Positions 39,125 to 53,917 of a stretch of 64,000 nt of DNA are shown here, piece by piece. The first letter of the stretch is position 1. Every line of letters begins with the position of its first letter. Below the pieces are notes generated by a model, which did not search any database, was not told where the DNA came from, and saw only the letters and a program-made list of their open reading frames with translations. The translations under genes and the position numbers were made by a program. Location of the stretch: positions 62,001 through 126,000 of IMG/VR virus record IMGVR_UViG_3300047510_001118. The stretch is one strand, 5' to 3'.

Positions 39125-39808
39125 ATGAGTAAACAATTTCACCAAGCCCTCAAGACTATACTTGACATGCCCTACTATAAGAACGACCAAGCTCGTTCTG
39201 GGGCCACAGACGCAGGACACGAACAGGCCGTGGCCGACAGAGTTGAATCCGCAGGATTCACAGCAGTGTCCAAAGCACAACACCCAAAACTGACCAAAAG
39301 CCTACTGCGTCGATGGGCAGAGGGTGGCAGCGATCAAGACCTACGTCGAGCCACAGAAGGCATGCCTCCGGGTTCATTTATTGTACAGCCCGCAGGATCA
39401 CAGGGCTTTCCAGATATCCTAGTTCGAGACTTCAACGACAGATTCATAGCCCTTGAATGTAAAAGCGGTAAAAATGGACAGTGTCCCATGTGGAATGACA
39501 ACACTCCCAAACCCATGGCTATCTATGTGCTGAGTTCGGGCGTACAGAACAGCACCACAGTGTTCATGGGTCGTGATGTGATCACAGCAGAAGAACAGAG
39601 CCTAATGGATGAGCTACAGACCAAACTCACAGCCATAGTCAAAGAGTATGCTGTGAAGTTAACCAAAGTAGATCGTTTTAACAGGGGTTGGATACAAAAG
39701 GCACGTAAACAACATTTTCAAGGCGGGGGCTCGGAAAAGACTAATTACTTTACACACAGCCAACGATCAATCTGCGAAAAGAATGCCCTAGACTATGCCC
39801 AACAGTAA
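39125..39808 (+). CDS. putative PD-(D/E)xK restriction endonuclease
   Basis: GFPDILV...ALECKS; directly upstream of and overlapping an MTase. Confidence 0.65.
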   Translation: MSKQFHQALKTILDMPYYKNDQARSGATDAGHEQAVADRVESAGFTAVSKAQHPKLTKSLLRRWAEGGSDQDLRRATEGMPPGSFIVQPAGSQGFPDILVRDFNDRFIALECKSGKNGQCPMWNDNTPKPMAIYVLSSGVQNSTTVFMGRDVITAEEQSLMDELQTKLTAIVKEYAVKLTKVDRFNRGWIQKARKQHFQGGGSEKTNYFTHSQRSICEKNALDYAQQ

Positions 39809-40748: not shown

Positions 40749-40750
40749 TG

Positions 40751-40924
40751 TCACTGTAGTTCAATCCAAGTGGCCATGCGATCATCACACTCTACCAGTG
40801 TAACATAGTGATCAGTGAGATCGTCATACATGATGTGTATGATGCGAAAGTAGCCCTGGAACCGGAGATCCTGTACACGATTCAATTGGCTGAGGTTAAG
40901 GTCAAAGGTCCTGATTCTAGTCAT
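40751..40924 (-). CDS. 57-aa hypothetical protein
   Basis: hand-translated ORF with TAAATA (40932-40937) upstream. Confidence 0.45.
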   Translation of the reverse strand: MTRIRTFDLNLSQLNRVQDLRFQGYFRIIHIMYDDLTDHYVTLVECDDRMATWIELQ

Positions 40925-40952
40925 GGTCAAATATTTATGGATAACTACTGAT

Positions 40953-41243
40953 ATGAACTTATTACGTGCAACCCGTGACTTCTGGGTGAGAAGTTATACT
41001 AGTGATCGCAGGGCATTTTACTATGAAACCATAGCCGCAGTATGCCTATTCACATCAACTACCTATTTGGCAGTCACTGCCAATCAACCCTTGATGTACT
41101 ACATATATCCCATAAACTTCCTGGGTGCGATCTTTAGTATCTTGAGTTTCCTACGCAGAGGCGCAGGCTGGCCCTTGGTCATGACCATATATTTCGCACA
41201 CCTACACGTATTTGGCTTTGGACGCAGTCTAGGCTTTTGGTAG
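40953..41243 (+). CDS. small multi-TM membrane protein
   Basis: three hydrophobic segments. Confidence 0.65.
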   Translation: MNLLRATRDFWVRSYTSDRRAFYYETIAAVCLFTSTTYLAVTANQPLMYYIYPINFLGAIFSILSFLRRGAGWPLVMTIYFAHLHVFGFGRSLGFW

Positions 41244-41244
41244 A

Positions 41245-41436
41245 CTAGGCCACGTGGTCTTTACGGGGCACAGGTGTCATCTCTGGGTCTATCATCAGGG
41301 CCCAAAATACCCGATCTTCCCGTATGTAGAACTCTGCGTATGGCTCCACGGCGCAGGCATGTACCCACTCTGCGCACTGCCATAACTGCTCCTGAACACC
41401 CTCGGGTGCCGAAGTTCTATAACAACGTATGTACAT
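41245..41436 (-). CDS. hypothetical protein
   Basis: AGGAGCGAA RBS (41439-41447) before ATG 41436. Confidence 0.65.
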   Translation of the reverse strand: MYIRCYRTSAPEGVQEQLWQCAEWVHACAVEPYAEFYIREDRVFWALMIDPEMTPVPRKDHVA

Positions 41437-41496
41437 AATTCGCTCCTCGCTCACTGTTATTTACACAGAGCTTTAAATACTTCAAGGAGCGGGATT

Positions 41497-41709
41497 ATGA
41501 CCAAACAACAGCAGAGAACTCAGCGAATCATAGCACAGATGCGGATTCTAGCAGAAACACGCTACAGAGATCGAAATCTACAGCAGTTATATATGGTGGG
41601 ATTTCTAGCAGAACACCTGAGCAGGGCCATGGGTCAAGACAGCAAGGTCTACACAGACTTTTGGGATAATATTCAAGAGCTGGGACTTACAGAACCCGGC
41701 CCCAACTGA
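41497..41709 (+). CDS. hypothetical protein
   Basis: TAAATA at 41474, AAGGAG RBS. Confidence 0.6.
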   Translation: MTKQQQRTQRIIAQMRILAETRYRDRNLQQLYMVGFLAEHLSRAMGQDSKVYTDFWDNIQELGLTEPGPN

Positions 41710-41896
41710 TTCTAGCCCATATACGATCATAAAGATAGTAGGATGTCATCCAAACAGCATTGATGATCAAGGTGGGCACTAGAGCGGATTCCAAGCTCTG
41801 CCCTGTGACCAATAACATAATATAGGTAGTGATCAAAACCCATATTCTGTATATGACAGTTTTAACTAGACTGCGAGTAGGTGTTTCGTAGAGCAT
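41687..41896 (-). CDS. DUF2061-like membrane protein
   Basis: ETPTRSLVKTVIYR...YYLYDRIWARISWG. Confidence 0.75.
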   Translation of the reverse strand: MLYETPTRSLVKTVIYRIWVLITTYIMLLVTGQSLESALVPTLIINAVWMTSYYLYDRIWARISWGRVL

Positions 41897-41949
41897 AAAT
41901 TCCCGTTCAAGAGTCCCCTAAGCCCTAGAAGGGCCAGCGCAAAAATTTT

Positions 41950-42135
41950 TTAGTGTATGTACTCTATATAATAAGCAACAGCAGACAATAACAAAGTCAC
42001 ATATATCCAACCAAACTGTGATAAATGACCCAACTCTTCTGGCTCCGGTACTGGATAATAGCAGTCATAGTCCGGGTCATAGCGATACCGTCGGCCACTG
42101 CGTACTATGTATTCGTTGTATAGATCGTTGTTCAT
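41950..42135 (-). CDS. hypothetical protein with C-terminal TM
   Basis: 61-aa ORF. Confidence 0.5.
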   Translation of the reverse strand: MNNDLYNEYIVRSGRRYRYDPDYDCYYPVPEPEELGHLSQFGWIYVTLLLSAVAYYIEYIH

Positions 42136-42525
42136 ATTAGACTAGATCACTGGCCAGTTCGCGAGCTAGATCCTGACTGGGATCTCTTGACAAATACAAA
42201 ACAGCAAATACTGACCAAAACAACCCAAATGCTAGATAACCTATCATATAGTTTACTCCTTTGTAGTATATATGCGATGCCATTTTGGCTAGCACAGAGT
42301 CTGAATAGCCGCGAAGCGGCAGCGCCGCGGTTTTTTTGGCCTCCTAACTTCAACAGTGTATACACTATATTCTACTGTACTCACACTGTACGCTACTGTA
42401 CGCTACTGTATACGCAGCCTAAACGCACTGGCCCCGCTGCACCCACCTAGACCCATTGGTGTAATCTACCTGAGTGAACTGCCAAACTCCATTGACCCCG
42501 CTGCACTGATCTAGTATAATAAGGG

Positions 42526-42825
42526 ATGGACTCTAGACTTAGACAGTTTCTCTTGGGAATTTTGGCTATGTGCACAGTTGTGACCCTATGGCTGTGGGTC
42601 TCTGCCATAGAGATTGAAGAAGAGTTGATGGAACCTGAGTGGACAGTGCCGGAACGGTTCCTTAAGCCCGAAATCGCTGGCCCTAACTCAGTAGAAGATG
42701 ACGTAGACACTACAAAGATCTTAGAGCCCGAACCCCAGCATGGGTGGATAGTGCCTCCAGAACCCCTACGCAAGGCTGCGGGTAAGGTTAAACGGAAGAT
42801 CAAAAAGACTGTGAAAAAAGGGTGA
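42526..42825 (+). CDS. membrane-anchored hypothetical protein
   Basis: TTGACC-17-TATAAT at 42492-42520, ATG 6 nt later; N-terminal TM. Confidence 0.65.
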   Translation: MDSRLRQFLLGILAMCTVVTLWLWVSAIEIEEELMEPEWTVPERFLKPEIAGPNSVEDDVDTTKILEPEPQHGWIVPPEPLRKAAGKVKRKIKKTVKKG

Positions 42826-42847
42826 GAGTATTTGAACTATGCCTATC

Positions 42848-43416
42848 ATCGGTACGGACCGGTCAAGAAAAATATTGCTCATATCCTAGGTTTACCAGTA
42901 GCGACCGGTTGGGAAAACAGTGGCCGGTAGTGACCGCCGGTGTCTACCACCGTGAACCGGTATAGACCGAAACAGTGTTTTCACCATAAAAATCCCCTAG
43001 ATCGATGATAAATTACCATTCGGTCGCGACCGGTTCAAGGGTCTTTTAACCCTAGACACGGTAGGGTCACAGAGGATCTAAGTTAGTGTACGCTAACTCT
43101 AGATGCGAATAGTTCTTATCTACAGCGAAAAAACCGTTGTTCAAAAGCCACATCGGTCTCGACCGGCGGGTTAGTTAGTGCTTACTTAGAGAGAAAGTTA
43201 GTTGGCGCTTACATTTCTAGAAATGACAGGCACCCTCCACGTCCACCCCCGGACTGCCCGATCGAACGCATGTAGGACTAAGGTGTTATTATTATCGCTC
43301 TCTTAGTGTTTGCAGTATACTGTCACTCAGAGATTCTGTCAACCGGTAGTGACCGAATAGTTGAGTAGACTCTAGGGCTTTTCGGTAGTGACCGGTTGAC
43401 ATCGGTAGCGACCGGT
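42848..43416. repeat. non-coding hub of ACCGGT-N4-ACCGGT-like operator repeats
   Basis: copies at 42848, 42894, 42923, 42956, 43019, 43152, 43342, 43381, 43401; no credible ORF. Confidence 0.8.
43314..43342 (-). promoter_or_regulatory. leftward sigma70 promoter into the non-coding hub
   Basis: TTGACA-17-TATACT on the minus strand, with no start codon after its RBS-like AAGAGAGCGA. Confidence 0.7.
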
Positions 43417-43456
43417 GTTATACTATAGACTAGTTAATTAATTCAGGAGCGAACTG

Positions 43457-44158
43457 ATGAAACTGTTAAGTACTGCCAACCCAAAGATCCAGAAGGGTAC
43501 GAAACTGGGTTACTTGAGCTTTATCCTACACCTTGCGCCCGCAGATCTCAGTGGTCGTGAGACTTGCCCCAAGCGCACTCAAGGCTGCACCAGTGCATGT
43601 CTTAATACAGCGGGTCGTGGGGGTATGTTTAAACGGGGTGAAACGACTAACATGATCCAACAAGCTCGCATTCGTAAGACAAGGATGTTCTTTGAAGCTC
43701 GCGACGAATTCATGGCTCAACTAGAGAAAGACATTCGTTTAGGTATTAAGCAGGCCTCTAAGTTGGGATTGACACCCGTATTCCGTTTAAATGGTACCAG
43801 CGATCTTGCCTGGGAGAAGTACGGGATCATTGACAAGTTCCCAGGTGTACAGTTCTATGACTATACTAAGGTTTTGGGTCGCAAGGTCAGCCACTTAAAG
43901 AACTATCACTTGACGTTTTCAGCGGCAGATGGCAACGACAGAGATGTCCAAAAGGCCGTAGATCAAGGCATGAATGTGGCTGTGGTGTTCGATCGTTTGC
44001 CCGAAACTTACATGGGCAGGCGTGTGGAAGACGCTGATCAGCACGATCTGCGCTTCTTAGACCCTAAGGGTACAGTGGCAGGACTCAAAGCCAAGGGCCG
44101 TGCTAAGAAGGACACCACCGGATTTGTTCGTAAGACTATTATCTTGGAGGTTGCATAA
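43457..44158 (+). CDS. GP88-like phage protein
   Basis: CPKRTQGCTSACLNTAGRG, FRLNGTSD, FYDYTK, DLRFLDP. Confidence 0.75.
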   Translation: MKLLSTANPKIQKGTKLGYLSFILHLAPADLSGRETCPKRTQGCTSACLNTAGRGGMFKRGETTNMIQQARIRKTRMFFEARDEFMAQLEKDIRLGIKQASKLGLTPVFRLNGTSDLAWEKYGIIDKFPGVQFYDYTKVLGRKVSHLKNYHLTFSAADGNDRDVQKAVDQGMNVAVVFDRLPETYMGRRVEDADQHDLRFLDPKGTVAGLKAKGRAKKDTTGFVRKTIILEVA

Positions 44159-44346
44159 TGGCTCAATATGATCCGCAGGACGATCTACTGTTAGAGGACT
44201 TGGAGTATCGTAAGCAGATGGCCGTGGCCACCCTAAACGATGCCATCAATCAGATCTATAACATAGAGGGCGATCGCTGGCAAATGGCCTATGATACCCT
44301 GGAAGCCGTCATGGGTAATCTCAAGATAGAGGTTGACAACCGGTAG
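44158..44346 (+). CDS. hypothetical early protein
   Basis: GGAGG RBS; ends EVDNR. Confidence 0.6.
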   Translation: MAQYDPQDDLLLEDLEYRKQMAVATLNDAINQIYNIEGDRWQMAYDTLEAVMGNLKIEVDNR

Positions 44347-44391
44347 GGACCGGTGCTATACTATAGGCTAGATAGTTAAAAAGGAGCGAAG

Positions 44392-44655
44392 ATGTTTACA
44401 GTTGAAATCTACAAGAAGGATGCCCGTACTAAAGTGGGTGAGCGCATGGTCCACAAGGCAGATCATAATACCGATAACCTCTCAATGCTAGAGCACTCTG
44501 TGAAGAATACTTGGCGTGCATCACAGGGCTATCGCTACGAGATCCACGAGACCTATGTAACCCGACGGAACTTGATGGGCGGTGCGGAGTTCAAAGAACG
44601 CTATGACACGCCCTACTATTGCTCACCCAGTTCTGAATCTTATTGGAGTATGTGA
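44392..44655 (+). CDS. hypothetical early protein
   Basis: AAGGAGCGAA RBS; ends SPSSESYWSM. Confidence 0.75.
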   Translation: MFTVEIYKKDARTKVGERMVHKADHNTDNLSMLEHSVKNTWRASQGYRYEIHETYVTRRNLMGGAEFKERYDTPYYCSPSSESYWSM

Positions 44656-44656
44656 T

Positions 44657-44854
44657 ATGGCTACTGTAGACGGCGTAAGAGTACAGGTAGGGGACTGGGT
44701 CTCGTTTAAGAGCGACATAGAACAGTCGGGCAAGATCCAAGCAGTACTGTCGGGCAATAGGTTAGTGCTCACTAACCCTAACGGATTCCAGGGTGACTAC
44801 ATTGGTGGCTCGGAGACTACGATAGAACGTGCAGAGGACTGTTGGATCGAATAG
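44657..44854 (+). CDS. hypothetical early protein
   Basis: GGAG RBS before MATVDG. Confidence 0.6.
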   Translation: MATVDGVRVQVGDWVSFKSDIEQSGKIQAVLSGNRLVLTNPNGFQGDYIGGSETTIERAEDCWIE

Positions 44855-44916
44855 TGGTTGACAACCGGTACTGACCGGTTGTATACTGCAGTTATAGTAA
44901 ACAAAAAGGAGCGAAG

Positions 44917-45180
44917 ATGAATATCAGTACACTGCAAGCATTGGTAGAACAAGAGAATCGTTGGGGTAAATTGTTTGGGCGTCGTGAGCTCAGCCTGCTC
45001 CGCGCAGAAGATCGTCAGAAGATCGCTGGGATCATTGACAGCAGACTCAGCCCTGAGAACTTGACCTGCGATGGCGAGTTAAGCCGTGCAGAAGTGAACA
45101 GTCGCTATCGTCAATTGACCCGTGCGGCAGAAGAGTTGTTGAGCATTGACTCTAGTGTGACCTTTTACGAATTTAACTAA
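44917..45180 (+). CDS. hypothetical early protein
   Basis: AAGGAGCGAA RBS; LSPENLTCDGE. Confidence 0.75.
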   Translation: MNISTLQALVEQENRWGKLFGRRELSLLRAEDRQKIAGIIDSRLSPENLTCDGELSRAEVNSRYRQLTRAAEELLSIDSSVTFYEFN

Positions 45181-45190
45181 GGAGATTGAT

Positions 45191-45328
45191 ATGAACACCT
45201 ATCGTATTCAAGTGCGACTCAGTAACGGTATGGTCACTGAGACCGCTGTACAGGCTATTAGCCCTGCGATCGCCCGTGCCATGGTTGAGAGTCAGTATGG
45301 CGCAGGTTCCTTTTTGGGCTACCTTTAA
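45191..45328 (+). CDS. 45-aa early protein
   Basis: hand-translated, AAGGAG RBS. Confidence 0.6.
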   Translation: MNTYRIQVRLSNGMVTETAVQAISPAIARAMVESQYGAGSFLGYL

Positions 45329-45364
45329 TTGACAACCGGTCATGACCGGTAGTAAAGTATAACT

Positions 45365-45655
45365 ATGAAAGCAGTCAAACACACCGACGGAATACGCAGG
45401 ATCACCATGAAGATGGAGGTTGCTGTGGATGTTCGCCACTTGACCCTGTATGCACTGGACATGGTCAAAGGCGAGCAGTTCCCGGTGGACGTGATTTGTT
45501 CTGCTAACAAAAGGGAGATCTTTGCCCTAGCTCGAGCCAATATTCAGTCATTTGGTAAGGACACAGCAATTCAGAACGTGCCGCTGAGTCTAAACCCTGT
45601 AGAGATACAGCGAGCAATGGATCACGTTCGTAGTGTTTTTCCGGAGATTGATTAA
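45365..45655 (+). CDS. hypothetical early protein (leaderless)
   Basis: ATG 7 nt after the -10 box. Confidence 0.6.
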   Translation: MKAVKHTDGIRRITMKMEVAVDVRHLTLYALDMVKGEQFPVDVICSANKREIFALARANIQSFGKDTAIQNVPLSLNPVEIQRAMDHVRSVFPEID

Positions 45656-45960
45656 TGAATTCGATGCTTAGTTTGTATGGTAGACCTGTGGTCATGTTCG
45701 ATGTTAAGAACAAAGAACATCGTAGGATGGCACACCGGTTCTTGGTGGAACGTTCATGGGGTGGGTGCCCGGTGAGATTCGCCCTGCCCATTGGTGAGGG
45801 CAATGTCTACTCTATGGTCATGCGACTGTTGACCCAGTACTATTCTGCCAAAGAGTTTGGCCCTATTCCACAAGAGGACAGCGATCGTTGGCGTGAAGAT
45901 CTTGTGGCAAATACGCCACAGGTTGAATGGCGTAGAGCAACAGAGGTTGACAACCGGTAG
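45655..45960 (+). CDS. hypothetical early protein
   Basis: WGGCPVRF; ends EVDNR. Confidence 0.65.
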   Translation: MNSMLSLYGRPVVMFDVKNKEHRRMAHRFLVERSWGGCPVRFALPIGEGNVYSMVMRLLTQYYSAKEFGPIPQEDSDRWREDLVANTPQVEWRRATEVDNR

Positions 45961-46092
45961 GGACCGGTGCTATACTAATGATACTGTGAAAGTTAAGGGT
46001 GGTTCTGGCAGTCCTAGGTAAAACCTTAATTCAGAGTCAAATCAAGTGCGTGCCAACTCTGAGCCCAACTATTTTTGAAAAGGAGCGAACCT

Positions 46093-46290
46093 ATGTATGA
46101 CATCGTAAAGAACCCAATCCCCCGTAGCGGTCTATTCACTACGCCTACCCTGGAAGAGATCCAACGTCACATCAGCGGTCTACCCAGCGGTGAGCAGGCA
46201 GTGGCCAGCATGGTGTTCATGTTCACGCTGAACGCCTGTAACAAACTCGTAGAAGACGAGATCCTCTCTAAAGATGTATTCGCACAGTAA
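46093..46290 (+). CDS. hypothetical early protein
   Basis: AAGGAGCGAA RBS before MYDIV. Confidence 0.7.
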   Translation: MYDIVKNPIPRSGLFTTPTLEEIQRHISGLPSGEQAVASMVFMFTLNACNKLVEDEILSKDVFAQ

Positions 46291-46300
46291 GGAGCAGACT

Positions 46301-46576
46301 ATGAAGTCAGTACAAGAGATCAACTCAGCAATCATCCAAGGTACCTTTACCAATGACGAGCTCACTAGCATGATTGACGCTGTGAAGTTTGCACGTAGCC
46401 GTCTAAGTAACCAAATCAAATTCCAGGTGCGCAATGGTAGCACAGTGACATTCACTAGCAAACACGGTATGACTTATAGGGGCACTGTGGAGAAGGTGGC
46501 TATCAAATACGCCACAGTCAACACCCAAGTAGGTCGTTACAAGGTTCCTATGAACATGTTAGAGGTTGTTGCGTAA
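46301..46576 (+). CDS. hypothetical early protein (SH3-like C-terminus)
   Basis: AAGGAG RBS. Confidence 0.7.
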   Translation: MKSVQEINSAIIQGTFTNDELTSMIDAVKFARSRLSNQIKFQVRNGSTVTFTSKHGMTYRGTVEKVAIKYATVNTQVGRYKVPMNMLEVVA

Positions 46577-46656
46577 ACGCAACACACCGGTAACTACCGG
46601 TTGACAAGATAGCGGACCGGTAGTATACTATAGGCTAAGTTAACAAGGAGCGAACT

Positions 46657-46926
46657 ATGTTAAACATCAGCAAAATCGTCAAAGTCTACAACGGACGCAT
46701 AGGTTGTATGTGCGGCTGTAACGGAAAATATTCCTATACCGAAGACGGTGCCAGGAACTATGGCCCGGGCTACGACGTCACAGACAGCATCAATGAGCGT
46801 AGTGTGCGCATCATTGCTAAGAAGATCCTCAGCAATCCGAATGTAGAGTTTGAAAACAATTATGCGTTCGTAGAGGATCGCGTTCGTAACAAAATGCAAA
46901 TGGTGGTTTTTAAGGAGCAGGCATGA
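46657..46926 (+). CDS. hypothetical early protein
   Basis: AAGGAGCGAA RBS; GCMCGCNG. Confidence 0.75.
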   Translation: MLNISKIVKVYNGRIGCMCGCNGKYSYTEDGARNYGPGYDVTDSINERSVRIIAKKILSNPNVEFENNYAFVEDRVRNKMQMVVFKEQA

Positions 46927-47273
46927 TTAAATTTAATTGCGTATTAGAGACAGCCGGAAACGGCTACTGGTCGGACGTTGCTAAGTCTGTGAACGTCACT
47001 AAGATCAGCGTACCCTATGTCAACGAAGACGAGGACTTTGGTGAGCTCTGCGTTTACTTTGACAAGCAATGGGACACCCGCAAGGACGGGTTGATCTATA
47101 CGGACAGCCAGTTCCTTACAATGCTGAAAGACCGGCTCACAGAGTGTGGCTTTGATGCCACAGATGTAGACTACTCAGAGCAGGGCATGCAGGGCAACGA
47201 CTACGTGAGCTTAGACGTAGGCGAAAAGTTCCTAAAAAGTTGGTTCAATGTGGTTGACAAAGTTCTGGATTGA
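46923..47273 (+). CDS. hypothetical early protein
   Basis: coupled ORF; YSEQGMQG. Confidence 0.75.
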   Translation: MIKFNCVLETAGNGYWSDVAKSVNVTKISVPYVNEDEDFGELCVYFDKQWDTRKDGLIYTDSQFLTMLKDRLTECGFDATDVDYSEQGMQGNDYVSLDVGEKFLKSWFNVVDKVLD

Positions 47274-47315
47274 GCTTATACTATTAAAACAGTAACAAAT
47301 TAAGGAGCGAAACTT

Positions 47316-47795
47316 ATGGCAACTCGAAGCAGAATTGGCGTCATGCACGGAGATGTGGTCAAACACGTTTACTGTCACTGGGACGGTTATTTGAGCAATA
47401 ATGGTCAAATCCTACAAGAACACTACGATTCAACAAAGGCCAACAACTTGGTCGCGCTGGGTGACATTAGCAGTCTGCGCCCCGACATTGGTGAGAAGCA
47501 CGACTTTAGCCGTTTGGACAGCCCCCTGTCTGAAGACGAGTACGAAAAGCTCTACGGCAACATGACCACGTTCTACGGACGTGATCGCGGCGAAGAGAAC
47601 ACAGGTTGGAAGGTCAGCCACTCGTTTGAGGACTTCTTGGATCACGCTGCCGGATGCGGTGCTGAATGGTACTACATTCTCAGAGACGGTGTTTGGTATT
47701 GTGGCAACTTGTACAGCAGTGATTCACGCCACTACAAGAACTTGGTAGTACTGCGTGACAGCATTGAGTTGGAGTTGGCAGAGGAGGCAGCATGA
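47316..47795 (+). CDS. conserved phage early protein
   Basis: MATRSRIG...VYCHWDGY. Confidence 0.8.
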   Translation: MATRSRIGVMHGDVVKHVYCHWDGYLSNNGQILQEHYDSTKANNLVALGDISSLRPDIGEKHDFSRLDSPLSEDEYEKLYGNMTTFYGRDRGEENTGWKVSHSFEDFLDHAAGCGAEWYYILRDGVWYCGNLYSSDSRHYKNLVVLRDSIELELAEEAA

Positions 47796-48004
47796 AAGTT
47801 ATCGTAGAGACTGTGCTGACCCAAGAGCTTGAGGTTCCTGACAACTGGGATAGGTACGATGTGTTTGACTTCCTAGCAGAGAATCAATCCTTCCGTACAG
47901 CGTTCCAGGGTGTGAGCAACACGGACCAAACAGCCCGCATCATTGACGTGGGTGTGGTAACTGAAACAGTAACCGAAATGGGCGAGGAGGCCTTTGATGA
48001 GTAA
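47792..48004 (+). CDS. hypothetical early protein
   Basis: GGAGG RBS. Confidence 0.65.
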   Translation: MKVIVETVLTQELEVPDNWDRYDVFDFLAENQSFRTAFQGVSNTDQTARIIDVGVVTETVTEMGEEAFDE

Positions 48005-48179
48005 AATGGCAGAATTGGATATGTATGCTTACGATATTGAGCAACTGTATATCGATGGCTTGACTGAAAAGAACATTGCCAAGACCCTGGACATCCCCGT
48101 AGAGTACGTCTACGCTTGGATGGAGATGAATGGTGTGTGCGACGAAGAGTTCAGCCCTAACGCAACTATTAACTCCTAA
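47994..48179 (+). CDS. small HTH-like protein
   Basis: DGLTEKNIAKTLDIPVEYV. Confidence 0.55.
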   Translation: MMSKMAELDMYAYDIEQLYIDGLTEKNIAKTLDIPVEYVYAWMEMNGVCDEEFSPNATINS

Positions 48180-48190
48180 GGCCCCGCTAT

Positions 48191-48418
48191 ATGCAGATCA
48201 CAATTCAGAACCTTAGCCCTGTTGAAATCGAAATTGCGGATGCGCTTTGGGCCTGCGAGGATTTGAATGAGGTCAGAGACTACGTTCTCAGACTGCCAAA
48301 ATCATTGAGAGATCGGGCTCATGCTCTTTATCATACAATGATCTACGAAGTTATTGATCAGGAAATGGATGTTAACGATCTAGAAATGGCGAATCAAGTC
48401 ATTGACAAATATCGTTAA
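48191..48418 (+). CDS. hypothetical early protein
   Basis: 75-aa ORF. Confidence 0.6.
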   Translation: MQITIQNLSPVEIEIADALWACEDLNEVRDYVLRLPKSLRDRAHALYHTMIYEVIDQEMDVNDLEMANQVIDKYR

Positions 48419-48476
48419 TCTGCTATAATAATAAGACGATGCGGAACAGCATCTCTTTAACTACAGAGGAATTAAA

Positions 48477-48752
48477 ATGAAATACACTTTTTCTAAAGAA
48501 AGCAAGACTTTTAAAGTTTTCAACGCTCTTTATCAGGGCGAGCGTTTGACACAGAGCCAAGCCGTTAAACGTTTCGGCGTTAAGAATTTGGCTGCTGAAG
48601 CAAGCCGTATCCGTCAAAACGGTTACGCTGTCTACGCAAAGAGCCGTACTGCTGGTAATGGTGTTACCGTTACTGAGTACGAAATGGGTAATCCAAGTCG
48701 TGAGATCGTTGCTTTAGGTTACAAAGCCAAAGCAATGGGCATCACTATCTAA
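48477..48752 (+). CDS. winged-HTH DNA-binding protein
   Basis: LTQSQAVKRFGVKNLAAEASRIRQNGYAV followed by a beta-hairpin wing; own promoter; strong codon bias. Confidence 0.7.
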   Translation: MKYTFSKESKTFKVFNALYQGERLTQSQAVKRFGVKNLAAEASRIRQNGYAVYAKSRTAGNGVTVTEYEMGNPSREIVALGYKAKAMGITI

Positions 48753-48758
48753 GAATAA

Positions 48759-48895
48759 ACTCGCCGCGATGGCGATGTGAAGTCCTAGGATTCGCTCCCC
48801 TAGGCAACGGCTGAACCGATTCGCTCCCGGGTAGGCCACCGGAAGGGTACTGTAAAAGGTACCCTTCCACCTTATGTGGGTATTCAAAATACCAG
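48759..48895. ncRNA. structured intergenic RNA carrying two hairpins with identical ATTCGCTCC loops
   Basis: hairpins at 48762-48776, 48784-48804, 48809-48837 and 48841-48868 (10-bp perfect stem). Confidence 0.6.
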
Positions 48896-48954
48896 TTGAC
48901 AGTTTGGAGGATCGGCGCTATACTATGCACATAGTAAGAAGTTAGGAGCGAAAG

Positions 48955-49239
48955 ATGGAAAAAGGAACTTGCCCAGTCTGTAATGGATCAACCCGTGTGC
49001 CCGCTGGGGATAACAAATATAAATCAGTTATCGCTGGCTACGACCAGGCTACTGATACTTTTGGTTGTACCAACTGCGGGGGTCAGTATATGTACGGTCG
49101 CCCAACAGGTGAAGTTCGCTTGAACAAGGCGGGAGAGCCCTGCACTCACAAATATTCTTCTAAGACAGTGGGACGGTGCTTGACGGAATACACCTGCGAG
49201 CATTGTGGGGATCGATTCCAGATTGACAGCGGTGACTGA
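48955..49239 (+). CDS. zinc-ribbon early protein
   Basis: CPVC, CTNC, CEHC; AGGAGCGAA RBS. Confidence 0.75.
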   Translation: MEKGTCPVCNGSTRVPAGDNKYKSVIAGYDQATDTFGCTNCGGQYMYGRPTGEVRLNKAGEPCTHKYSSKTVGRCLTEYTCEHCGDRFQIDSGD

Positions 49240-49281
49240 TTGTGCTATACTATAGGTATAGTGAATGATAAGGAGCGAAAA

Positions 49282-49533
49282 ATGTTGACACTAGATAAAA
49301 TCCGTAAAATTGAATTCCGTGGCGAAGAGTTTGAACAGTTCCACGGCAGTCCGTTTGATCGCGGTGCAGCAGATAGTTATTACGGGAGACCTCAGGACCC
49401 GCATTGGTTTCCTGAAGGCACTTACAAGGGACGCCGCATTGACAGCCCTGACATGACTATGAAAGAACTTCGTGCTTACTTCGCAGGCTACGAATACAAC
49501 GAACAGCATGGCGACAAGAAGGACTGGGGTTAA
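49282..49533 (+). CDS. conserved phage early protein
   Basis: HGSPFDRGAADSYYGR; AAGGAGCGAA RBS. Confidence 0.75.
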   Translation: MLTLDKIRKIEFRGEEFEQFHGSPFDRGAADSYYGRPQDPHWFPEGTYKGRRIDSPDMTMKELRAYFAGYEYNEQHGDKKDWG

Positions 49534-49625
49534 TGGCTGACCTTGTAACCTATGTCCTACTTCGCATCATCCAGGTGGCGATACTGGTGTTTGCGATAGC
49601 AGTTTTTATCAACGGTTTTTTCTAA
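49533..49625 (+). CDS. 30-aa hydrophobic peptide
   Basis: hand-translated, coupled ORF. Confidence 0.45.
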   Translation: MADLVTYVLLRIIQVAILVFAIAVFINGFF

Positions 49626-49634
49626 GGAGCGAAT

Positions 49635-50258
49635 ATGCCTAATTGGTGCAATAACAGAGTGGTGATCAGCCACGAAGACTCAAGCAAGATGGAAGCCTTG
49701 GTAGAGGCTATCAAAGATGGTAAGTTCTGTAATCATGTGATTCCTGTGCCCGAAAGTCTACATATCGTAGCAGGCTCTGTAGGTGACCCTGATGAGCAGA
49801 AGAAGCTCGAAGAGGACACAGCCCGTAACCTAGAAGTCCACGGCTATGGCAACTGGTATGACTTCTGTGTGAATCGCTGGGGAACCAAGTGGGATGTAGA
49901 CCCTTACGATCCTACAGATGTTAAGGTTGAGAACAACACCATTGAGTTTGGTTTTGATTCAGCCTGGGCACCACCCGTGGGAGTCTACGATGAACTAGTG
50001 AATCAGGGCTTCGAAGTAGAGGCAACTTACTACGAGCCAGGCATGGCCTTTGTGGGTCGTTGGCATAATGGCTATGATGACTGCGTTGAGTTCGGCGGTG
50101 AGACCTCTGCGACTGTGCGTGATGTCATCGGAGAAGAGCTAGATGATGAGTATGGTATCTCAGAGACCATGGCTGAATACGAAGAGATGGACAAGGACGA
50201 AACTACCCAGTGGTATGAAGAGGGTGTGGAATCCAAAGGTTTAGAGCCACACAAATAA
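49635..50258 (+). CDS. YubB/DUF1281-like ferredoxin-domain protein
   Basis: MPNWCNN, WYDFC...WGTKWD, FDSAWAPP, YYEPG. Confidence 0.8.
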   Translation: MPNWCNNRVVISHEDSSKMEALVEAIKDGKFCNHVIPVPESLHIVAGSVGDPDEQKKLEEDTARNLEVHGYGNWYDFCVNRWGTKWDVDPYDPTDVKVENNTIEFGFDSAWAPPVGVYDELVNQGFEVEATYYEPGMAFVGRWHNGYDDCVEFGGETSATVRDVIGEELDDEYGISETMAEYEEMDKDETTQWYEEGVESKGLEPHK

Positions 50259-50412
50259 CAGCCACTAGGCCCTGCAACACGCCTGGGCACTTCGCTGGTG
50301 TGGCTTTTTTACAACAGGAATACCCTACTTAACCGTAGGGTTTTTCTGCTTTTTGGTTGACGGTTTGGGTGGCCCCTGCTATACTATAGAAACTGTAACA
50401 AAGGAGCGAGCA

Positions 50413-50565
50413 ATGCTGACACTGAAAGACGCTAAGAAACTGTGTGGGATGGATCCGCGCACTACGGCACGTTGGTATGCGCAGGGCTACTATATGAAGG
50501 CTGACGGACGCTGGTACATTACTGTAGGCGGTGTAGAGTATGTGAAATACTACACCGGAAACTAG
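50413..50565 (+). CDS. small early protein
   Basis: AAGGAGCGAG RBS before MLTLKD. Confidence 0.65.
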   Translation: MLTLKDAKKLCGMDPRTTARWYAQGYYMKADGRWYITVGGVEYVKYYTGN

Positions 50566-50610
50566 GGTTTTTGGTTGACAACCGGTAGTGACCGGTGCTA
50601 TAATATGAAC

Positions 50611-50829
50611 ATGAACTTAGAAACTATCGCCAAACACACAGCCCTGTTCTTTACCCTAGTAGGGGCCCTATTCACAGCACTAGCCTGGGATCCCATGAAC
50701 ATCCTGTTCTTGAACTTGGGCAGTCTGCTGTATCTCTTTTGGGCCTACAGGGTTAGGGATTGGAATCTCGTAGCAGTCAATGCAGGACTGTTGACAATCT
50801 ATGTGATTGGCGCTATAATTAGACTATGA
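50611..50829 (+). CDS. small multi-TM protein (PnuC-like segment)
   Basis: three hydrophobic helices; leaderless start. Confidence 0.55.
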   Translation: MNLETIAKHTALFFTLVGALFTALAWDPMNILFLNLGSLLYLFWAYRVRDWNLVAVNAGLLTIYVIGAIIRL

Positions 50830-50972
50830 TGAAACTTCAAGTAAAGATTCCCCAAAAGACTCGTGCACATCGTGTGCTTTGGGACAGAGACTTGCCTTTT
50901 CGTCCAAAAACGGAACAGAGCAAGACACAGTATCGCCGCAAGGCTAAACATCCTAACAAGGAGATTGCATAA
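50826..50972 (+). CDS. 48-aa basic protein
   Basis: hand-translated; RAHRVLWDRDLPFRPK...YRRKAKH. Confidence 0.6.
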   Translation: MMKLQVKIPQKTRAHRVLWDRDLPFRPKTEQSKTQYRRKAKHPNKEIA

Positions 50973-51154
50973 TGAAAGAAGGCTTCATGTTTGTCACTGG
51001 ACTCTTGCTGACGCTGGGCGGAGTGGGTGGAATTGAGAACTCTATGACGGACAGCGAACTGCTCTCATCGCTTGCTGTTGCTGTTGTGGGCTTGGGAATC
51101 TTTGGTTGTTCTGCTCTGATGATTCAGCAGAAAGAATTGGACAACCAAATCTAA
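50972..51154 (+). CDS. two-TM small protein
   Basis: AAGGAG RBS. Confidence 0.65.
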   Translation: MKEGFMFVTGLLLTLGGVGGIENSMTDSELLSSLAVAVVGLGIFGCSALMIQQKELDNQI

Positions 51155-51249
51155 AATATTGGTTGACACCCAATCCAAACGGTGTTACAATATGGATACA
51201 GTGAAAGGTTCACTGTTAACTTTAGGCAACTATAGAAAGGCAACTTAAA

Positions 51250-51618
51250 ATGGCAACTAGTAAACTGTACAACGTGGTAGGTATCTCTACCCTCAATGGC
51301 GACGCCAAAGTTCGCTTCGCAAATGATGTGATGCGCATCAAAGTGTTGGCTAAGAATGGTCACACTGACATCAATCTTGTAGAGCTTCCCTCTGCGATGT
51401 TGAAAACTGATGCAGCTCGCTTCTTGAGCAATCTCCCTGAGTTCCAAACTGCTGTGGCCAAGGCTGCTGTAGCAGAGTACCTTGACAAGAACGATCGTGC
51501 TCCTAAGGCACGTGTCGAAGTCAAGACTGCGGTGAAGAAAGCCGTTGAGACCAAGCCCGCAAAGGCCAAGGCTCCACGTGTGACTACTCCTGCTGAGGAC
51601 GAAGACGCACCCTTCTAA
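51250..51618 (+). CDS. hypothetical early protein with Ala/Lys-rich tail
   Basis: own promoter at 51163. Confidence 0.7.
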   Translation: MATSKLYNVVGISTLNGDAKVRFANDVMRIKVLAKNGHTDINLVELPSAMLKTDAARFLSNLPEFQTAVAKAAVAEYLDKNDRAPKARVEVKTAVKKAVETKPAKAKAPRVTTPAEDEDAPF

Positions 51619-51689
51619 GGTAGGGATCAAAAGCGGTTGACAACAGCCGCTTTTGGTGCTATACTTTAACAAATAGTAAGGAGCGTGAG

Positions 51690-51824
51690 ATGGAACTTAT
51701 TCTAGCATTCGTAGCAGGACTCATCGTAATGGATCTTCTCTGGGCTTGGCGCATGGGCATTCCCCAAATGCTTTGGGCTCGTTGGAAGTATCGTAAATCT
51801 CTCAAAGATCAGGAGCAATCATGA
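51690..51824 (+). CDS. 44-aa membrane peptide
   Basis: AAGGAGCGTG RBS. Confidence 0.55.
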   Translation: MELILAFVAGLIVMDLLWAWRMGIPQMLWARWKYRKSLKDQEQS

Positions 51825-51949
51825 CCAGTCATATCATAGCATTCATCGCAGGTGTCGTAGTGGCCACAGTAGGTTTCACAGGCGTGGCTCAGATCGCAGA
51901 CTCAGGCATCCAGAAGGTTCAGGCAATATCAAAAGAAGCGGCTAAGTAA
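51821..51949 (+). CDS. 42-aa membrane peptide
   Basis: AGGAG RBS, ATGA coupling. Confidence 0.55.
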   Translation: MTSHIIAFIAGVVVATVGFTGVAQIADSGIQKVQAISKEAAK

Positions 51950-51956
51950 TCAACCT

Positions 51957-52034
51957 GGGCCTCTAGCTCATGTTGGTTAGAGCAGTGGACTCATAATCCA
52001 TTGGTGCGGAGTTCGACTCTCCGGGGGCCCACCA
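51957..52034 (+). tRNA. tRNA CAT anticodon, probably Ile2 (lysidine, reads AUA)
   Basis: cloverleaf with GTGGA-CTCATAA-TCCAT arm, GTTCG T-loop, encoded CCA; resembles ileX rather than Met tRNAs. Confidence 0.9.
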
Positions 52035-52038
52035 GATC

Positions 52039-52123
52039 GCGACTGTGGTGAAATCGGTAGACACAAGAGACTTAAAATCTCTCGCTGCAAGGCGTGCCAG
52101 TTCGATTCTGGCCAGTCGCACCA
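52039..52123 (+). tRNA. tRNA-Leu(TAA)
   Basis: AGAGA-CTTAAAA-TCTCT arm, long variable arm, CCA. Confidence 0.93.
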
Positions 52124-52129
52124 AACAAT

Positions 52130-52206
52130 CTGCCCGTAGCTCAACCGGATAGAGCAACGGCCTTCTAAGCCGTAGGTTGGGGGTTCGATTCCCTCCGGGC
52201 AGGCCA
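52130..52206 (+). tRNA. tRNA-Arg(TCT)
   Basis: ACGGC-CTTCTAA-GCCGT arm, CTGCCCG/CGGGCAG acceptor stem, CCA. Confidence 0.93.
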
Positions 52207-52291
52207 GTGTTGCGAAAAAACAACACATTTTTTGGTTGACAATTTGGCTGACCCCTGCTATACTATTGATACTGTGATAACGAAGGAGCGA

Positions 52292-52633
52292 ATGATGATA
52301 CTAGTAATCGACACACAATACATGGAAAACTACGGTGCCCACGATTGGGACGGCAAGGGCGAGTGCCCCCAGTACTGGAAGATGAAGGGCGGCAGTTCCT
52401 ACAAGATCACCGGCATTCCTTCCGGTGTAGACTTCCAGGCAGTCATCGAACAGGTGACCCCAGAGATCGAGCGTAGCAACGACTACTGCCGTGAATACAT
52501 CATCGGCACCCACAGTGAAGCAGATGACTACCTCTCTGAGTTTGAGAAGAGCCAACTGGACTACGAGGGTGAGATCCAGTTTCCGGAACCCACAATCCAG
52601 TACGGGTCTTTGGTTGACAAAGTCGCGGCTTGA
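52292..52633 (+). CDS. conserved phage early protein
   Basis: TQYMENYGAHDWDGKGECPQYWKMKGG. Confidence 0.75.
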   Translation: MMILVIDTQYMENYGAHDWDGKGECPQYWKMKGGSSYKITGIPSGVDFQAVIEQVTPEIERSNDYCREYIIGTHSEADDYLSEFEKSQLDYEGEIQFPEPTIQYGSLVDKVAA

Positions 52634-52671
52634 TCGTATACTATTAAAACTGTAACTAAGGAGCGAACCAA

Positions 52672-53004
52672 ATGACAGACATCAAAACTATCGTAGATCA
52701 AGCAGTGGCCCTGGCTCAGGACGCTAGCCAGCAGTACTTCCAAAACACACTGAAAGGCCAGGATCAATTCGCCTGCGGCTTTGCCTGGGTTGATGTATAC
52801 GTAGAGCGTACCAATTCAAAAGAAGCCAAAGAGCTAATCGCTGCAGGCTTTAAGAAAGACTACAAGCCCAAGTGCTTGAGCATGTGGAACCCAGGCGGTA
52901 TCAACGTACAGAACATTGACACCAAAGAAGCGGGTGCTGATGCTATGGCTCGTTATCTACAGGCCCAGGGCTTCAAAGCCTACGCAGGCAGTCGATTAGA
53001 CTAA
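52672..53004 (+). CDS. conserved phage early protein
   Basis: ACGFAWV...QNIDTKEAGA. Confidence 0.75.
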   Translation: MTDIKTIVDQAVALAQDASQQYFQNTLKGQDQFACGFAWVDVYVERTNSKEAKELIAAGFKKDYKPKCLSMWNPGGINVQNIDTKEAGADAMARYLQAQGFKAYAGSRLD

Positions 53005-53064
53005 GTATTGACAGCCCCCAGGGGGCTGTAGTATAATTACATTTTTAACAGAGAAAGAGCGAAC

Positions 53065-53916: not shown

Positions 53917-53917
53917 C

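What the first reader, a model, noticed from the sequence alone, without database searches (positions are those of the whole stretch)
42848..50598. 16-bp palindromic operator ACCGGT-N4-ACCGGT filling the -35/-10 spacer of early promoters
Seen: perfect or near-perfect copies directly after TTGACA at 44339, 44864, 45335, 45953 and 50581, one at 43401 that overlaps the last base of the -35 box, one just upstream of the 46601 promoter at 46586, and about eight more in 42848-43396. Promoters at 47254, 48896, 49223 and 51637-53008 lack it. Inference: a dimeric phage regulator (repressor, or MerR-style spacer-twisting activator, since several spacers are 18 bp) controls a subset of early genes, with the hub acting as a high-avidity site. 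The wHTH at 48477 is the nearest candidate.
Basis: partly seen in the sequence, partly recalled or inferred. Interest (0 to 1): 0.72.

Follow-up and report, generated by a model that had tools for sequence, protein, structure and literature searches.

The report
Phage early-promoter operator with its regulator
A 16-base palindrome that sits inside a subset of the strong early promoters of an uncultured freshwater jumbo phage is real. It travels across related phages together with one small phage gene of unknown fold, so it is most likely the binding site of a phage-made switch that turns those early genes down.

Summary
ACCGGT-N4-ACCGGT occurs 6 times exactly and 16 times with up to 2 mismatches in the window (0.96 expected). 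Fifteen of these lie in 42848-50596, at the stated positions.

Across about 95 related loci the arms are invariant and the central 4 bases vary. Sites take fixed positions relative to consensus sigma-70 promoters, and promoter-less copies cluster in a non-coding hub.

The suggested winged-helix protein (48477) is not the specificity factor. It is equally conserved in relatives that lack the motif, and no alignment column separates the two groups.

The 96-aa gene at 45365-45655 is the better candidate. It lies behind an operator-bearing promoter. It is present in every motif-bearing locus (13 of 13, two reached by blind DNA-pattern scans). It is absent from 75 motif-free loci and from five motif-free genomes. 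One 39%-identical homologue sits beside a different palindrome of the same 6-4-6 geometry in the same spacer position.

Its confident model matches no known DNA-binding fold, so binding remains inferred. MerR-style activation is unlikely because the spacers are 17-18 bp.

The overall architecture matches the PeSL promoter/stem-loop cassettes of T4-type phages. The main rival reading is therefore a plain PeSL stem-loop.

The parts
42826..43456 (.). Non-coding hub. It holds ten motif copies at 42848, 42894, 42923 (3 mismatches), 42956, 43019, 43152, 43342, 43381, 43391 and 43401. The last three overlap in 10-bp register.
   Evidence: Homologous hubs occur in L008, L011, L050, L068, L086, L089, L094 and L099.
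43314..43357 (-). Minus-strand promoter in the hub: -35 at 43342-43337, -10 at 43319-43314. A motif copy (43342-43357) ends on the first T of its -35 box, so its centre is near -42.5.
   Evidence: The same arrangement is conserved in 8 related loci.
43396..43424 (+). Promoter of the GP88-family gene (43457-44158). The operator at 43401-43416 starts on the last base of the -35 box. Further half-sites at 43381 and 43391 span the -35 box.
44333..44362 (+). Early promoter with the operator at 44339-44354 filling an 18-bp spacer. The last T of the operator plus the next G form the TGn extended -10.
44858..44887 (+). Early promoter with operator at 44864-44879.
45329..45358 (+). Promoter of the candidate regulator, with operator at 45335-45350. 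The -10 is TAAAGT and the ATG follows 6 nt later, so the mRNA is probably leaderless.
   Evidence: The same layout occurs in L068.
45365..45655 (+). Candidate regulator, 96 aa, with no Pfam or PHROG family. The AF2 model has pLDDT 89: a beta-hairpin followed by five helices. The stretch ANKREIFALAR is invariant.
45947..45976 (+). Early promoter with operator at 45953-45968. A leader of about 120 nt follows before the gene at 46093.
46586..46629 (+). Promoter (-35 at 46601) with the operator upstream at 46586-46601, centre near -42.5. A lone half-site lies in the spacer at 46616-46621, in 10-bp register.
50575..50604 (+). Isolated operator-bearing promoter (operator 50581-50596) in front of a small membrane protein.
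It is not linked to the motif.

Best explanation
**What it is.** The window carries the early, host-RNA-polymerase-transcribed region of an uncultured freshwater jumbo phage. The phage is distantly related to the PA5oct and T4-type groups. The region is built of small-gene cassettes, each behind a near-consensus sigma-70 promoter.

**Proposed mechanism (inferred).**
- ACCGGT-N4-ACCGGT is a sequence-specific operator laid over a subset of these promoters.
- The 96-aa product of gene 45365-45655 is made early from an operator-bearing promoter.
- It binds the operator, probably as a dimer or higher oligomer, because the half-site is itself a palindrome and half-sites repeat every 10 bp.
- Binding covers positions -29 to -14, including the TG of the extended -10, and so shuts off its own promoter and about six other immediate-early promoters.
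- Sites that end on the -35 box (centre about -42.5) and sites that span the -35 box give other promoters a different response. Whether that is repression or activation is not decided.
- The hub of 7-10 promoter-less sites acts as a high-avidity sink or nucleation centre.

**Shown.** The sites, their positions, their conservation and the gene-motif co-occurrence.

**Inferred.** That the protein binds DNA, and that binding represses.
For: 1. **Enrichment and positions.**
   - The motif is strongly enriched and clustered.
   - Over 10 non-redundant motif-bearing loci, 107 sites fall into fixed classes:
     - 50 in the spacer
     - 18 ending on the first T of a -35 box
     - 6 spanning the -35 box
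     - 33 promoter-less hub sites
2. **Sequence, not just pairing, is conserved.**
   - The arms are invariant and the centre is free. The flanks of promoter-less sites carry no information.
   - Degenerate copies do not keep pairing.
3. **Co-occurrence with gene 45365.**
   - It is present in 5 of 5 motif-bearing and 0 of 75 motif-free GP88 loci.
   - Every locus fetched through its homologues carries motif clusters.
   - It is absent, along with the motif, from five related genomes of 191-357 kb.
   - A blind DNA-pattern scan of 185,579 species' genomes gave one contig, and that contig encodes a 76% homologue.
   - The same scan of IMG/VR returned the known motif-bearing contigs plus one unrelated single site.
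4. **Not simple linkage.**
   - On the GP88 tree the motif-bearing state is scattered: 9 changes, at least 5 forced.
   - Gene and motif go together in 5 of 5 supported independent pairs and 9 of 9 on all branches.
   - Orthologous GP88 promoters keep their architecture but swap spacer content by lineage.
5. **Co-variation.**
   - A 43%-identical homologue in a 55% GC background keeps ACCGGT sites and a compact hub.
   - A 39%-identical homologue sits beside (A/T)GGACA-N4-TGTCC(T/G) in 7 promoter spacers: same 6-4-6 geometry, same position, 8 observed against 0.42 in shuffles.
6. **Autoregulatory layout.** The gene lies behind an operator-bearing promoter in the window and in relatives.
Against: - **DNA binding is not shown.**
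   - The protein has no Pfam or PHROG family.
   - The confident model has no structural match to any DNA-binding fold. The best PDB Z is 3.7. The only good match is an unnamed viral protein.
   - The family pI is near neutral, 4.7-8.1.
- **Palindromes in or around early promoters are a known general feature.** PeSL cassettes have them (PMC2839356). Motif-free relatives also show a modest hairpin excess at promoters.
- **Some copying within genomes.** N4 is partly shared within a genome, for example CATG six times in L086. Some copies therefore spread by duplication or conversion.
- **Limited statistics.** The independent-pairs test on supported branches reaches only p = 0.06.
- **Thin co-variation.** It rests on one clear case (L095) and one weak case (L101).
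- **No expression data.** No transcript or binding data exist for this phage. Only relatives' metatranscriptome scraps were found.
Confidence: 0.55

Rival explanations
1. The palindrome is only the stem-loop part of a PeSL-type cassette (promoter-early stem-loop). In this reading it is an RNA or DNA hairpin. It attenuates read-through from the upstream cassette and serves as a recombination point for cassette shuffling. Its uniform sequence within a genome comes from recombination or conversion between PeSLs. Gene 45365 is a linked passenger.
For: - PeSLs of T4-type phages combine consensus sigma-70 early promoters with stem-loops. Most commonly these lie between -35 and -10. They flank shuffled ORFan cassettes (PMC2839356, PMC4122927).
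- Here the gene order is heavily shuffled among relatives.
- Other promoters carry unrelated hairpins, for example 51626-51657 and 53014-53026.
- The 6-bp stem folds at about -9 to -17 kcal/mol.
- N4 is partly shared within genomes.
- Promoter segments of motif-free relatives fold somewhat better than controls.
Against: - No compensatory arm changes occur in more than 100 sites. The sequence itself is conserved down to 43% identity of the linked protein and across a shift from 47% to 55% GC.
- Dozens of promoter-less copies cluster in hubs.
- No U-tract follows the stem, and imperfect copies do not fold.
- A passenger gene should have been lost in some of 13 mosaic loci.
- The second lineage motif, GGTAAAACC, is not a palindrome at all, so spacer motifs in this family are not all hairpins.
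Confidence: 0.25
2. The motif is a protein operator, but the binder is not the 45365 protein. It would be a host transcription factor or a phage protein encoded outside the fetched neighbourhoods. The 45365 protein would be a partner, antagonist or target of that system.
For: - The 45365 protein shows no recognisable DNA-binding fold.
- Most motif-bearing contigs cover only 5-68 kb, so distant genes could not be profiled.
Against: - Within 10 kb on either side, 45365 is the only gene with a perfect profile.
- The wHTH is excluded as specificity factor.
- The promoter-plus-operator pattern is absent from 185,579 bacterial and archaeal species' genomes, apart from one phage-like contig.
- A divergent homologue goes with a different palindrome, which a fixed host factor would not explain.
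Confidence: 0.12
3. The hub is a replication origin or partition-like site. The 16-mers act as iterons bound by an initiator or centromere-binding protein, and the promoter copies serve its autoregulation.
For: - Hubs of relatives hold arrays of perfect DnaA boxes (TGTGGATAA) interleaved with the 16-mers: 9 in L089, 7 in L094, 6 in L050 and 5 in L008.
- The sites are repeated and partly phased.
Against: - The window's own hub has no DnaA box.
- The same sites sit in 6 or more promoters of unrelated small genes.
- No Rep-like or ParB/ParR-like protein was found among 30 early proteins.
- Helical phasing of non-overlapping sites is weak (p about 0.05, with related loci counted).
Confidence: 0.06

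Closest known systems
PeSLs (promoter-early stem-loops) of T4-type phages (Arbiol et al. 2010, PMC2839356; Comeau et al. 2014, PMC4122927)
   Same: - Strong consensus sigma-70 early promoters plus a Shine-Dalgarno sequence stand in front of small ORFan genes.
- A palindrome often lies between -35 and -10, or overlaps or precedes the -35 box.
- Cassette order is shuffled among relatives.
   Different: - Here one fixed 6-4-6 sequence is shared by a subset of promoters, and its arms never vary.
- It also occurs as many promoter-less copies in a hub.
- Its presence tracks one particular gene.
- PeSL stems are described as variable (often polyG/polyC) and as working as terminators. No binding protein is known for them.
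Lambda Cro-type early shut-off and autoregulation
   Same: - A small protein made from an early promoter.
- Dyad-symmetric operators overlap the core promoter elements of early promoters, including its own.
   Different: - No HTH_3/Cro domain or fold was detected.
- There are many more operators (about 17 in the window).
- They are spread over about 7 promoters and a hub rather than two tripartite operators.
- There is no sign of a lysogeny switch.
Aca repressors of anti-CRISPR operons
   Same: - The logic is the same: very strong early promoters for small host-takeover genes.
- These are damped by a small autoregulated repressor that binds inverted repeats within the promoter.
   Different: - Aca proteins are HTH proteins that act on their own operon. 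This resemblance rests on my own knowledge and was not tested here.
- The candidate here has an uncharacterised fold and a multi-promoter regulon.
Phage P1 C1 repressor with many dispersed operators
   Same: One phage protein with more than ten operators that overlap promoters across a large phage genome. This rests on my own knowledge.
   Different: - P1 operators are asymmetric 17-mers bound by a 283-aa monomer that maintains lysogeny.
- Here the sites are palindromic and confined to the early region.
MerR-family spacer-twisting activators
   Same: A dyad site centred in the -35/-10 spacer.
   Different: - The spacer is 17-18 bp, not 19-20 bp.
- The promoters are consensus and carry an extended -10.
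- No MerR-family protein is present.

Membership tests
Repressor-operator pair overlapping a sigma-70 promoter | Dyad-symmetric site overlapping core promoter elements | tested here: met
   50 of 107 sites fill positions -29 to -14, including the TG of the extended -10. Six span the -35 box.
Repressor-operator pair overlapping a sigma-70 promoter | Conserved recognition arms with a free centre, independent of flanks | tested here: met
   The arms carry about 2 bits per position and N4 positions 7-9 carry about 0. The flanks of promoter-less sites carry no information.
Repressor-operator pair overlapping a sigma-70 promoter | Cognate regulator gene that co-occurs with the sites and is itself controlled by them | tested here: met
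   Gene 45365-45655 is in 13 of 13 motif-bearing loci, 0 of 75 motif-free loci and 0 of 5 motif-free genomes. It lies behind operator-bearing promoters.
Repressor-operator pair overlapping a sigma-70 promoter | Regulator has a recognisable DNA-binding domain | tested here: not met
   There is no Pfam or PHROG hit and no PDB sequence hit. The best structural Z is 3.7. One unnamed viral look-alike was found.
Repressor-operator pair overlapping a sigma-70 promoter | Demonstrated binding and repression | not testable with these tools
   The protein-DNA complex job was not folded. No transcript data exist for this phage.
MerR-type activation | Over-long 19-20-bp spacer with the dyad centred in it | tested here: not met
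   Spacers are 18 bp (41 sites) or 17 bp (9 sites).
MerR-type activation | MerR-family regulator encoded nearby | tested here: not met
   No MerR hit among 30 early-region proteins.
PeSL cassette (T4-type phages) | Consensus sigma-70 early promoter plus Shine-Dalgarno in front of small ORFan genes in a plastic region | tested here: met
   About 20 near-consensus promoters lie at 43396-53008. Gene order is shuffled among 80 relatives.
PeSL cassette (T4-type phages) | Stem-loop-forming sequence within or next to the promoter | tested here: met
   A 6-bp stem with a 4-nt loop folds at -9 to -17 kcal/mol. The positions match PeSL subclasses.
PeSL cassette (T4-type phages) | Stem-loop acts as terminator or attenuator | not testable with these tools
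   No U-tract follows the stem. No RNA 3' ends are available.
HTH_39 winged-helix protein (48477) as the cognate regulator | Presence or recognition residues co-vary with the motif | tested here: not met
   It is present in 22 motif-free loci at about 80% identity. No discriminating alignment column was found.
Iteron-type origin | Repeats next to DnaA boxes, with a Rep-type initiator | tested here: inconclusive
   DnaA-box arrays occur in relatives' hubs but not in the window's. No Rep-like protein was found.
Intrinsic terminator | GC-rich stem followed by a U-run | tested here: not met
   The sites are not called by the terminator scan. They are followed by GCTATACT or GTTATAAT.

The most novel reading that the evidence does not exclude
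- The 96-aa protein family founded by gene 45365-45655 is a previously unrecognised fold of sequence-specific DNA-binding regulators.
- Together with its 6-4-6 palindromic operators it forms a portable 'private regulon'. This regulon is overlaid on PeSL-type early cassettes of jumbo phages.
- Regulator and operator diversify together: ACCGGT-N4-ACCGGT in one branch and AGGACA-N4-TGTCCT in another.
- A multi-site hub, packed with DnaA boxes in relatives, serves as a sink that times the shut-off of immediate-early genes.
Probability: 0.4. Interest if true: 0.75.

Novelty: new variant of a known kind. Interest (0 to 1): 0.6.

Why it matters
- **Gene timing in phages without their own polymerase.** How large virulent phages that rely on host RNA polymerase order the expression of dozens of small early genes is poorly understood. 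This locus offers a small, directly testable operator-regulator pair for that question.
- **A possible second role for PeSL palindromes.** If the 96-aa protein binds the site, then the palindromes inside PeSL-type promoter cassettes, so far read as terminators and recombination points, can also be operators.
- **A possible new protein family.** A protein family with no known fold would join the DNA-binding regulators.
- **A possible tool.** The pair would be a compact, orthogonal repressor-promoter part that works with consensus sigma-70 promoters.

Tried and rejected
- **Protein-DNA complex prediction** (two copies of the 45365 protein plus the 28-bp operator). The job was not folded, so it is no evidence either way.
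- **Fold searches** of the confident model in PDB (two methods), AlphaFold DB clusters, BFVD and the ESM Atlas, plus the language-model look-alike search. No informative match was found.
- **Rfam** on 40000-56000 found only three tRNAs.
- **Hub minus-strand transcript.** Its fold is no more stable than shuffles (z = 0.23). RNAalifold on 41 copies of the conserved minus-strand hub element gave no structure.
- **Helical phasing** of hub sites is weak: p about 0.05 for non-overlapping sites, not independent across relatives.
- **Transcript evidence.** No RNA run holds this phage. Relatives' metatranscriptome contigs cover some early genes, including a 256-nt contig over 45333-45588, but show no starts or ends.
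- **A regulator for the second lineage motif GGTAAAACC.** Two candidates were found, a GcrA-like Cys-rich protein of about 100 aa and a 303-aa protein. Neither has a clean profile.
- **Restriction or modification reading of ACCGGT.** Single hexamers outside the region number 37. My own composition-based estimate, not a tool result, is about 39, so I see no avoidance or enrichment.
- **Nucleotide search of the INPHARED phage collection.** No close relative was found.

Full report
**1.

- The pattern ACCGGTNNNNACCGGT occurs six times exactly in the window: 44339, 44864, 45335, 45953, 46586 and 50581. The expected number is 0.01.
- With up to two mismatches it occurs 16 times against 0.96 expected. 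Nine of these lie in 42848-43416.
- The window is bases 62001-126000 of a 278-kb IMG/VR virus record, estimated 75% complete.
- Across that record, 15 of 20 near-matches lie in this 8-kb stretch. The only other exact copy is an A/T-flanked terminator-like hairpin far away.
- The sequence shows about 20 near-consensus sigma-70 promoters on the + strand between 43396 and 53008. Each stands in front of one to three small genes with an AGGAGCGAA ribosome-binding site.
- The motif follows TTGACA directly at five promoters, starts on the last base of the -35 box at 43401, and ends on the first base of the -35 box at 46586.

**2. Anatomy**

- *Spacer sites.*
  - The 16-mer plus two bases make an 18-bp spacer.
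  - The last T of the motif and the following G form the TGn of an extended -10.
  - Where the motif starts one base earlier, the spacer is 17 bp. The motif therefore keeps its register to the -10 box.
- *Half-site symmetry.* ACCGGT is itself a palindrome. At 43381-43416, four half-sites follow each other every 10 bp across the -35 box.
- *Hub.*
  - The hub (42826-43456) is non-coding and holds ten copies of varying quality.
  - It also holds a minus-strand consensus promoter whose -35 box is preceded by a motif copy.

**3. Relatives**

- The GP88-family gene just downstream of the hub (Pfam PF17338) retrieved 80 related viral loci at 67-87% protein identity.
- All show the same promoter-cassette architecture. 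Only five carry ACCGGT-N4-ACCGGT.
- Others carry other recurrent spacer contents, for example GGTAAAACC in about 14 loci.
- Orthologous GP88 promoters keep -35, -10, leader and ribosome-binding site but swap the spacer content by lineage.
- Over ten non-redundant motif-bearing loci, 107 sites fall into the classes below.

| Position class | Sites |
|---|---|
| In the spacer, directly after TTGACA | 41 |
| In the spacer, starting one base earlier | 9 |
| Ending on the first T of a + strand -35 box (centre about -42.5) | 10 |
| Same arrangement at the conserved minus-strand hub promoter | 8 |
| Spanning the -35 box (ACCGGTTGACACCGGT) | 6 |
| Promoter-less, in hubs | 33 |

- The arms carry nearly 2 bits per position and the centre almost none.
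- There are 14 different N4 among 41 spacer sites and 26 among 52 promoter-less sites. The flanks of promoter-less sites carry no information.
The motif is not merely inherited with duplicated promoters.

**4. Which protein?**

*The winged-helix protein at 48477*
- It is a real HTH_39 match.
- It occurs at about 80% identity in 22 motif-free loci.
- An alignment of 8 motif-bearing and 21 motif-free copies has no discriminating column.
- It is not the specificity factor.

*The 96-aa gene at 45365-45655*
- A tblastn profile of 39 early genes against all loci singled it out. It is in 5 of 5 motif-bearing and 0 of 75 motif-free loci.
- Reverse tests agree. Every further locus reached through its homologues carries clusters of the motif.
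- Five related genomes of 191-357 kb lack both the gene and the motif.
- A blind scan of 185,579 species' genomes for promoter-plus-operator gave one contig, which encodes a 76% homologue.
- The same scan of IMG/VR returned the six known motif-bearing contigs and one unrelated contig with a single site.
- On a GP88 tree the motif-bearing state is scattered: 9 changes, at least 5 forced by supported branches.
- Gene and motif go together in 5 of 5 supported independent pairs (p = 0.06) and 9 of 9 on all branches.
- Simple block inheritance is therefore unlikely.

*Layout of the gene*
- In the window it has its own operator-bearing promoter, and its ATG lies six bases after the -10 box.
- In several relatives it is the third or fourth gene of an operon behind an operator-bearing promoter.

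**5. Co-variation**

- A profile search of 1.84 billion representatives found a small family of 30 clusters, all stand-alone proteins of about 95-105 aa.
- The table lists the three divergent homologues for which a recurrent spacer palindrome was seen.

| Homologue | Identity to window protein | Locus | Spacer palindromes nearby |
|---|---|---|---|
| P0129 | 43% | L099 (55% GC) | Five exact ACCGGT-N4-ACCGGT, in a compact hub and promoters |
| P0126 | 39% | L095 | (A/T)GGACA-N4-TGTCC(T/G) directly after TTGACA in seven promoters; 8 observed vs 0.42 in shuffles |
| P0127 | 36% | L101 | Two palindromes sharing the centre CA-AGGA-TG |

- The contigs of three further divergent homologues showed no recurrent palindrome. 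Two are under 3 kb and the third (L098) is a 9.7-kb stretch of a 16.8-kb contig.
- The evidence is suggestive but thin.

**6. What the protein looks like**

- An AlphaFold2 model built on 44 homologues is confident (pLDDT 89, pTM 0.80). It shows a beta-hairpin followed by five helices.
- The invariant stretch ANKREIFALAR falls in helix 49-63, preceded by a short helix and a turn.
- No search found a known DNA-binding fold. Foldseek against PDB gave nothing below E 0.6. An exhaustive aligner gave a best Z of 3.7. AlphaFold DB clusters gave only uncharacterised proteins at TM up to 0.63.
- BFVD gave one unnamed viral protein at TM 0.78.
- DNA binding by this protein is therefore an inference from comparative genomics, not from structure.
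- The one protein-DNA complex job was not folded and counts for nothing.

**7. Comparison with what is known**

- The general architecture matches PeSLs (promoter-early stem-loops) of T4-type phages. These have consensus early promoters with a stem-loop that most often lies between -35 and -10.
- They flank ORFan cassettes whose order is shuffled by recombination between PeSLs, and the stem-loop acts as terminator or attenuator (PMC2839356, PMC4122927).
- The phage is a distant relative of such phages. Its 283-aa ATPase-like early protein is 46% identical to one of the PA5oct group and is found in about 1300 T4-type records.
- Gene order here is heavily shuffled.
- Other promoters carry unrelated hairpins.
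- Promoter segments of motif-free relatives fold somewhat better than controls: 26% at or below -8 kcal/mol against 13% shuffled.

So the plain-PeSL reading is a serious rival. I rank it second for these reasons:
- The arm sequence, not only the pairing, is conserved over large divergence.
- No compensatory changes occur, and degenerate copies lose pairing.
- There is no U-tract after the stem.
- Promoter-less copies pile up in hubs.
- One gene tracks the motif perfectly.
- A sister lineage motif (GGTAAAACC) is not a palindrome.

MerR-type activation is disfavoured by the 17-18-bp spacers, the consensus hexamers and the absence of a MerR protein.

**8. Mechanism proposed**

- The 45365 protein, made at once from strong promoters, binds the operators.
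- It occludes positions -29 to -14 and so damps its own and about six other immediate-early promoters, as Cro or Aca proteins do.
- Operator-free early promoters (47254 to 53008) continue.
- Sites centred near -42.5 (the 46601 promoter and the conserved minus-strand hub promoter) may be repressed differently or activated. Those promoters are already consensus, so activation is not required.
- The hub may act as a sink that delays shut-off, or as a nucleation centre.
- These functional statements are inferred.

**9. Verdict**

- The feature is real and non-random. It is best read as a phage-encoded operator-regulator system overlaid on known PeSL-type cassettes.
- It is a new variant of a known kind, with a candidate regulator of uncharacterised fold.
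- My confidence that the 45365 protein is the binder and acts mainly as a repressor is about 0.55.

Noticed in passing
L089:7665-7822, L094:6822-7030, L050:408-616, L008:2205-2281 (hubs of relatives); the window hub has none: Arrays of up to nine perfect DnaA boxes (TGTGGATAA), about 11 bp apart, are interleaved with the ACCGGT sites in the hubs of relatives. Motif-free relatives hold 72 boxes in 1.09 Mb; my own estimate of the chance expectation is about 8. They could mark an origin or a DnaA sink.
   Followed up: partly
window 43236-43290, minus strand; 51 copies in L005-L094: A conserved element, TTCGAA-N8-15-GGGG(A/G)TGGACG(T/G)(G/C)GA, always lies on the minus strand just downstream of a minus-strand consensus promoter upstream of the GP88 gene. 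It occurs in motif-bearing and motif-free relatives alike. There is no Rfam match and no consensus structure. It may be an unknown small RNA or a DNA site.
   Followed up: partly
L012, L022, L028, L038, L046, L049, L053, L054, L067, L073, L076, L079, L082: A second lineage-specific spacer motif, GGTAAAACC, is not palindromic and occurs in either orientation. It occupies early-promoter spacers in about 14 relatives. The candidate partners are a Cys-rich GcrA-like protein of about 100 aa and a 303-aa protein. Both have imperfect profiles.
   Followed up: partly
window 45353-45367, 50599-50613, 50814-50828: Start codons lie 6 nt after the -10 hexamer at 45365 and 50826. At 50605 and 50611 they lie 0 and 6 nt after it. 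This suggests leaderless mRNAs. The N-terminal 14 residues of the 45365 protein are conserved, which supports the upstream start.
   Followed up: partly
window 44326-44346 and 45940-45960: Two unrelated genes (44158-44346 and 45655-45960) end with the same peptide, EVDNR-stop. Their last codons are the next promoter's GAGGTTGACAACCGGTAG, that is the -35 box plus the first operator arm, and the stop codon falls just after that arm.
   Followed up: no
window 38000-54000 versus the rest: The early region has 46-49% GC, against 33-42% elsewhere in the window.
   Followed up: no
window 51957-52206: Three tRNA genes (Met-CAT, Leu-TAA, Arg-TCT) sit inside the early promoter-cassette region.
   Followed up: no
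window 42826-42847; L086:3154-3165, L089:7440-7451, L099:4165-4178: The left edge of the hub starts with a conserved stretch, GAGTATTTGAACTATGCCT(A/C)TC, directly before the first motif copy. It is kept even in the 55% GC relative.
   Followed up: no
window 41245-41454 and 40751-40930, minus strand: Small minus-strand ORFs upstream of the hub have homologues on the opposite strand upstream of GP88 in many relatives. The hub's minus-strand promoter may therefore drive a leftward unit. Gene calls in 41-42.8 kb are ambiguous between strands.
   Followed up: partly
window 45977-46092: An unusually long leader of about 120 nt lies between the 45947 promoter and the gene at 46093. It has no Rfam match.
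   Followed up: no
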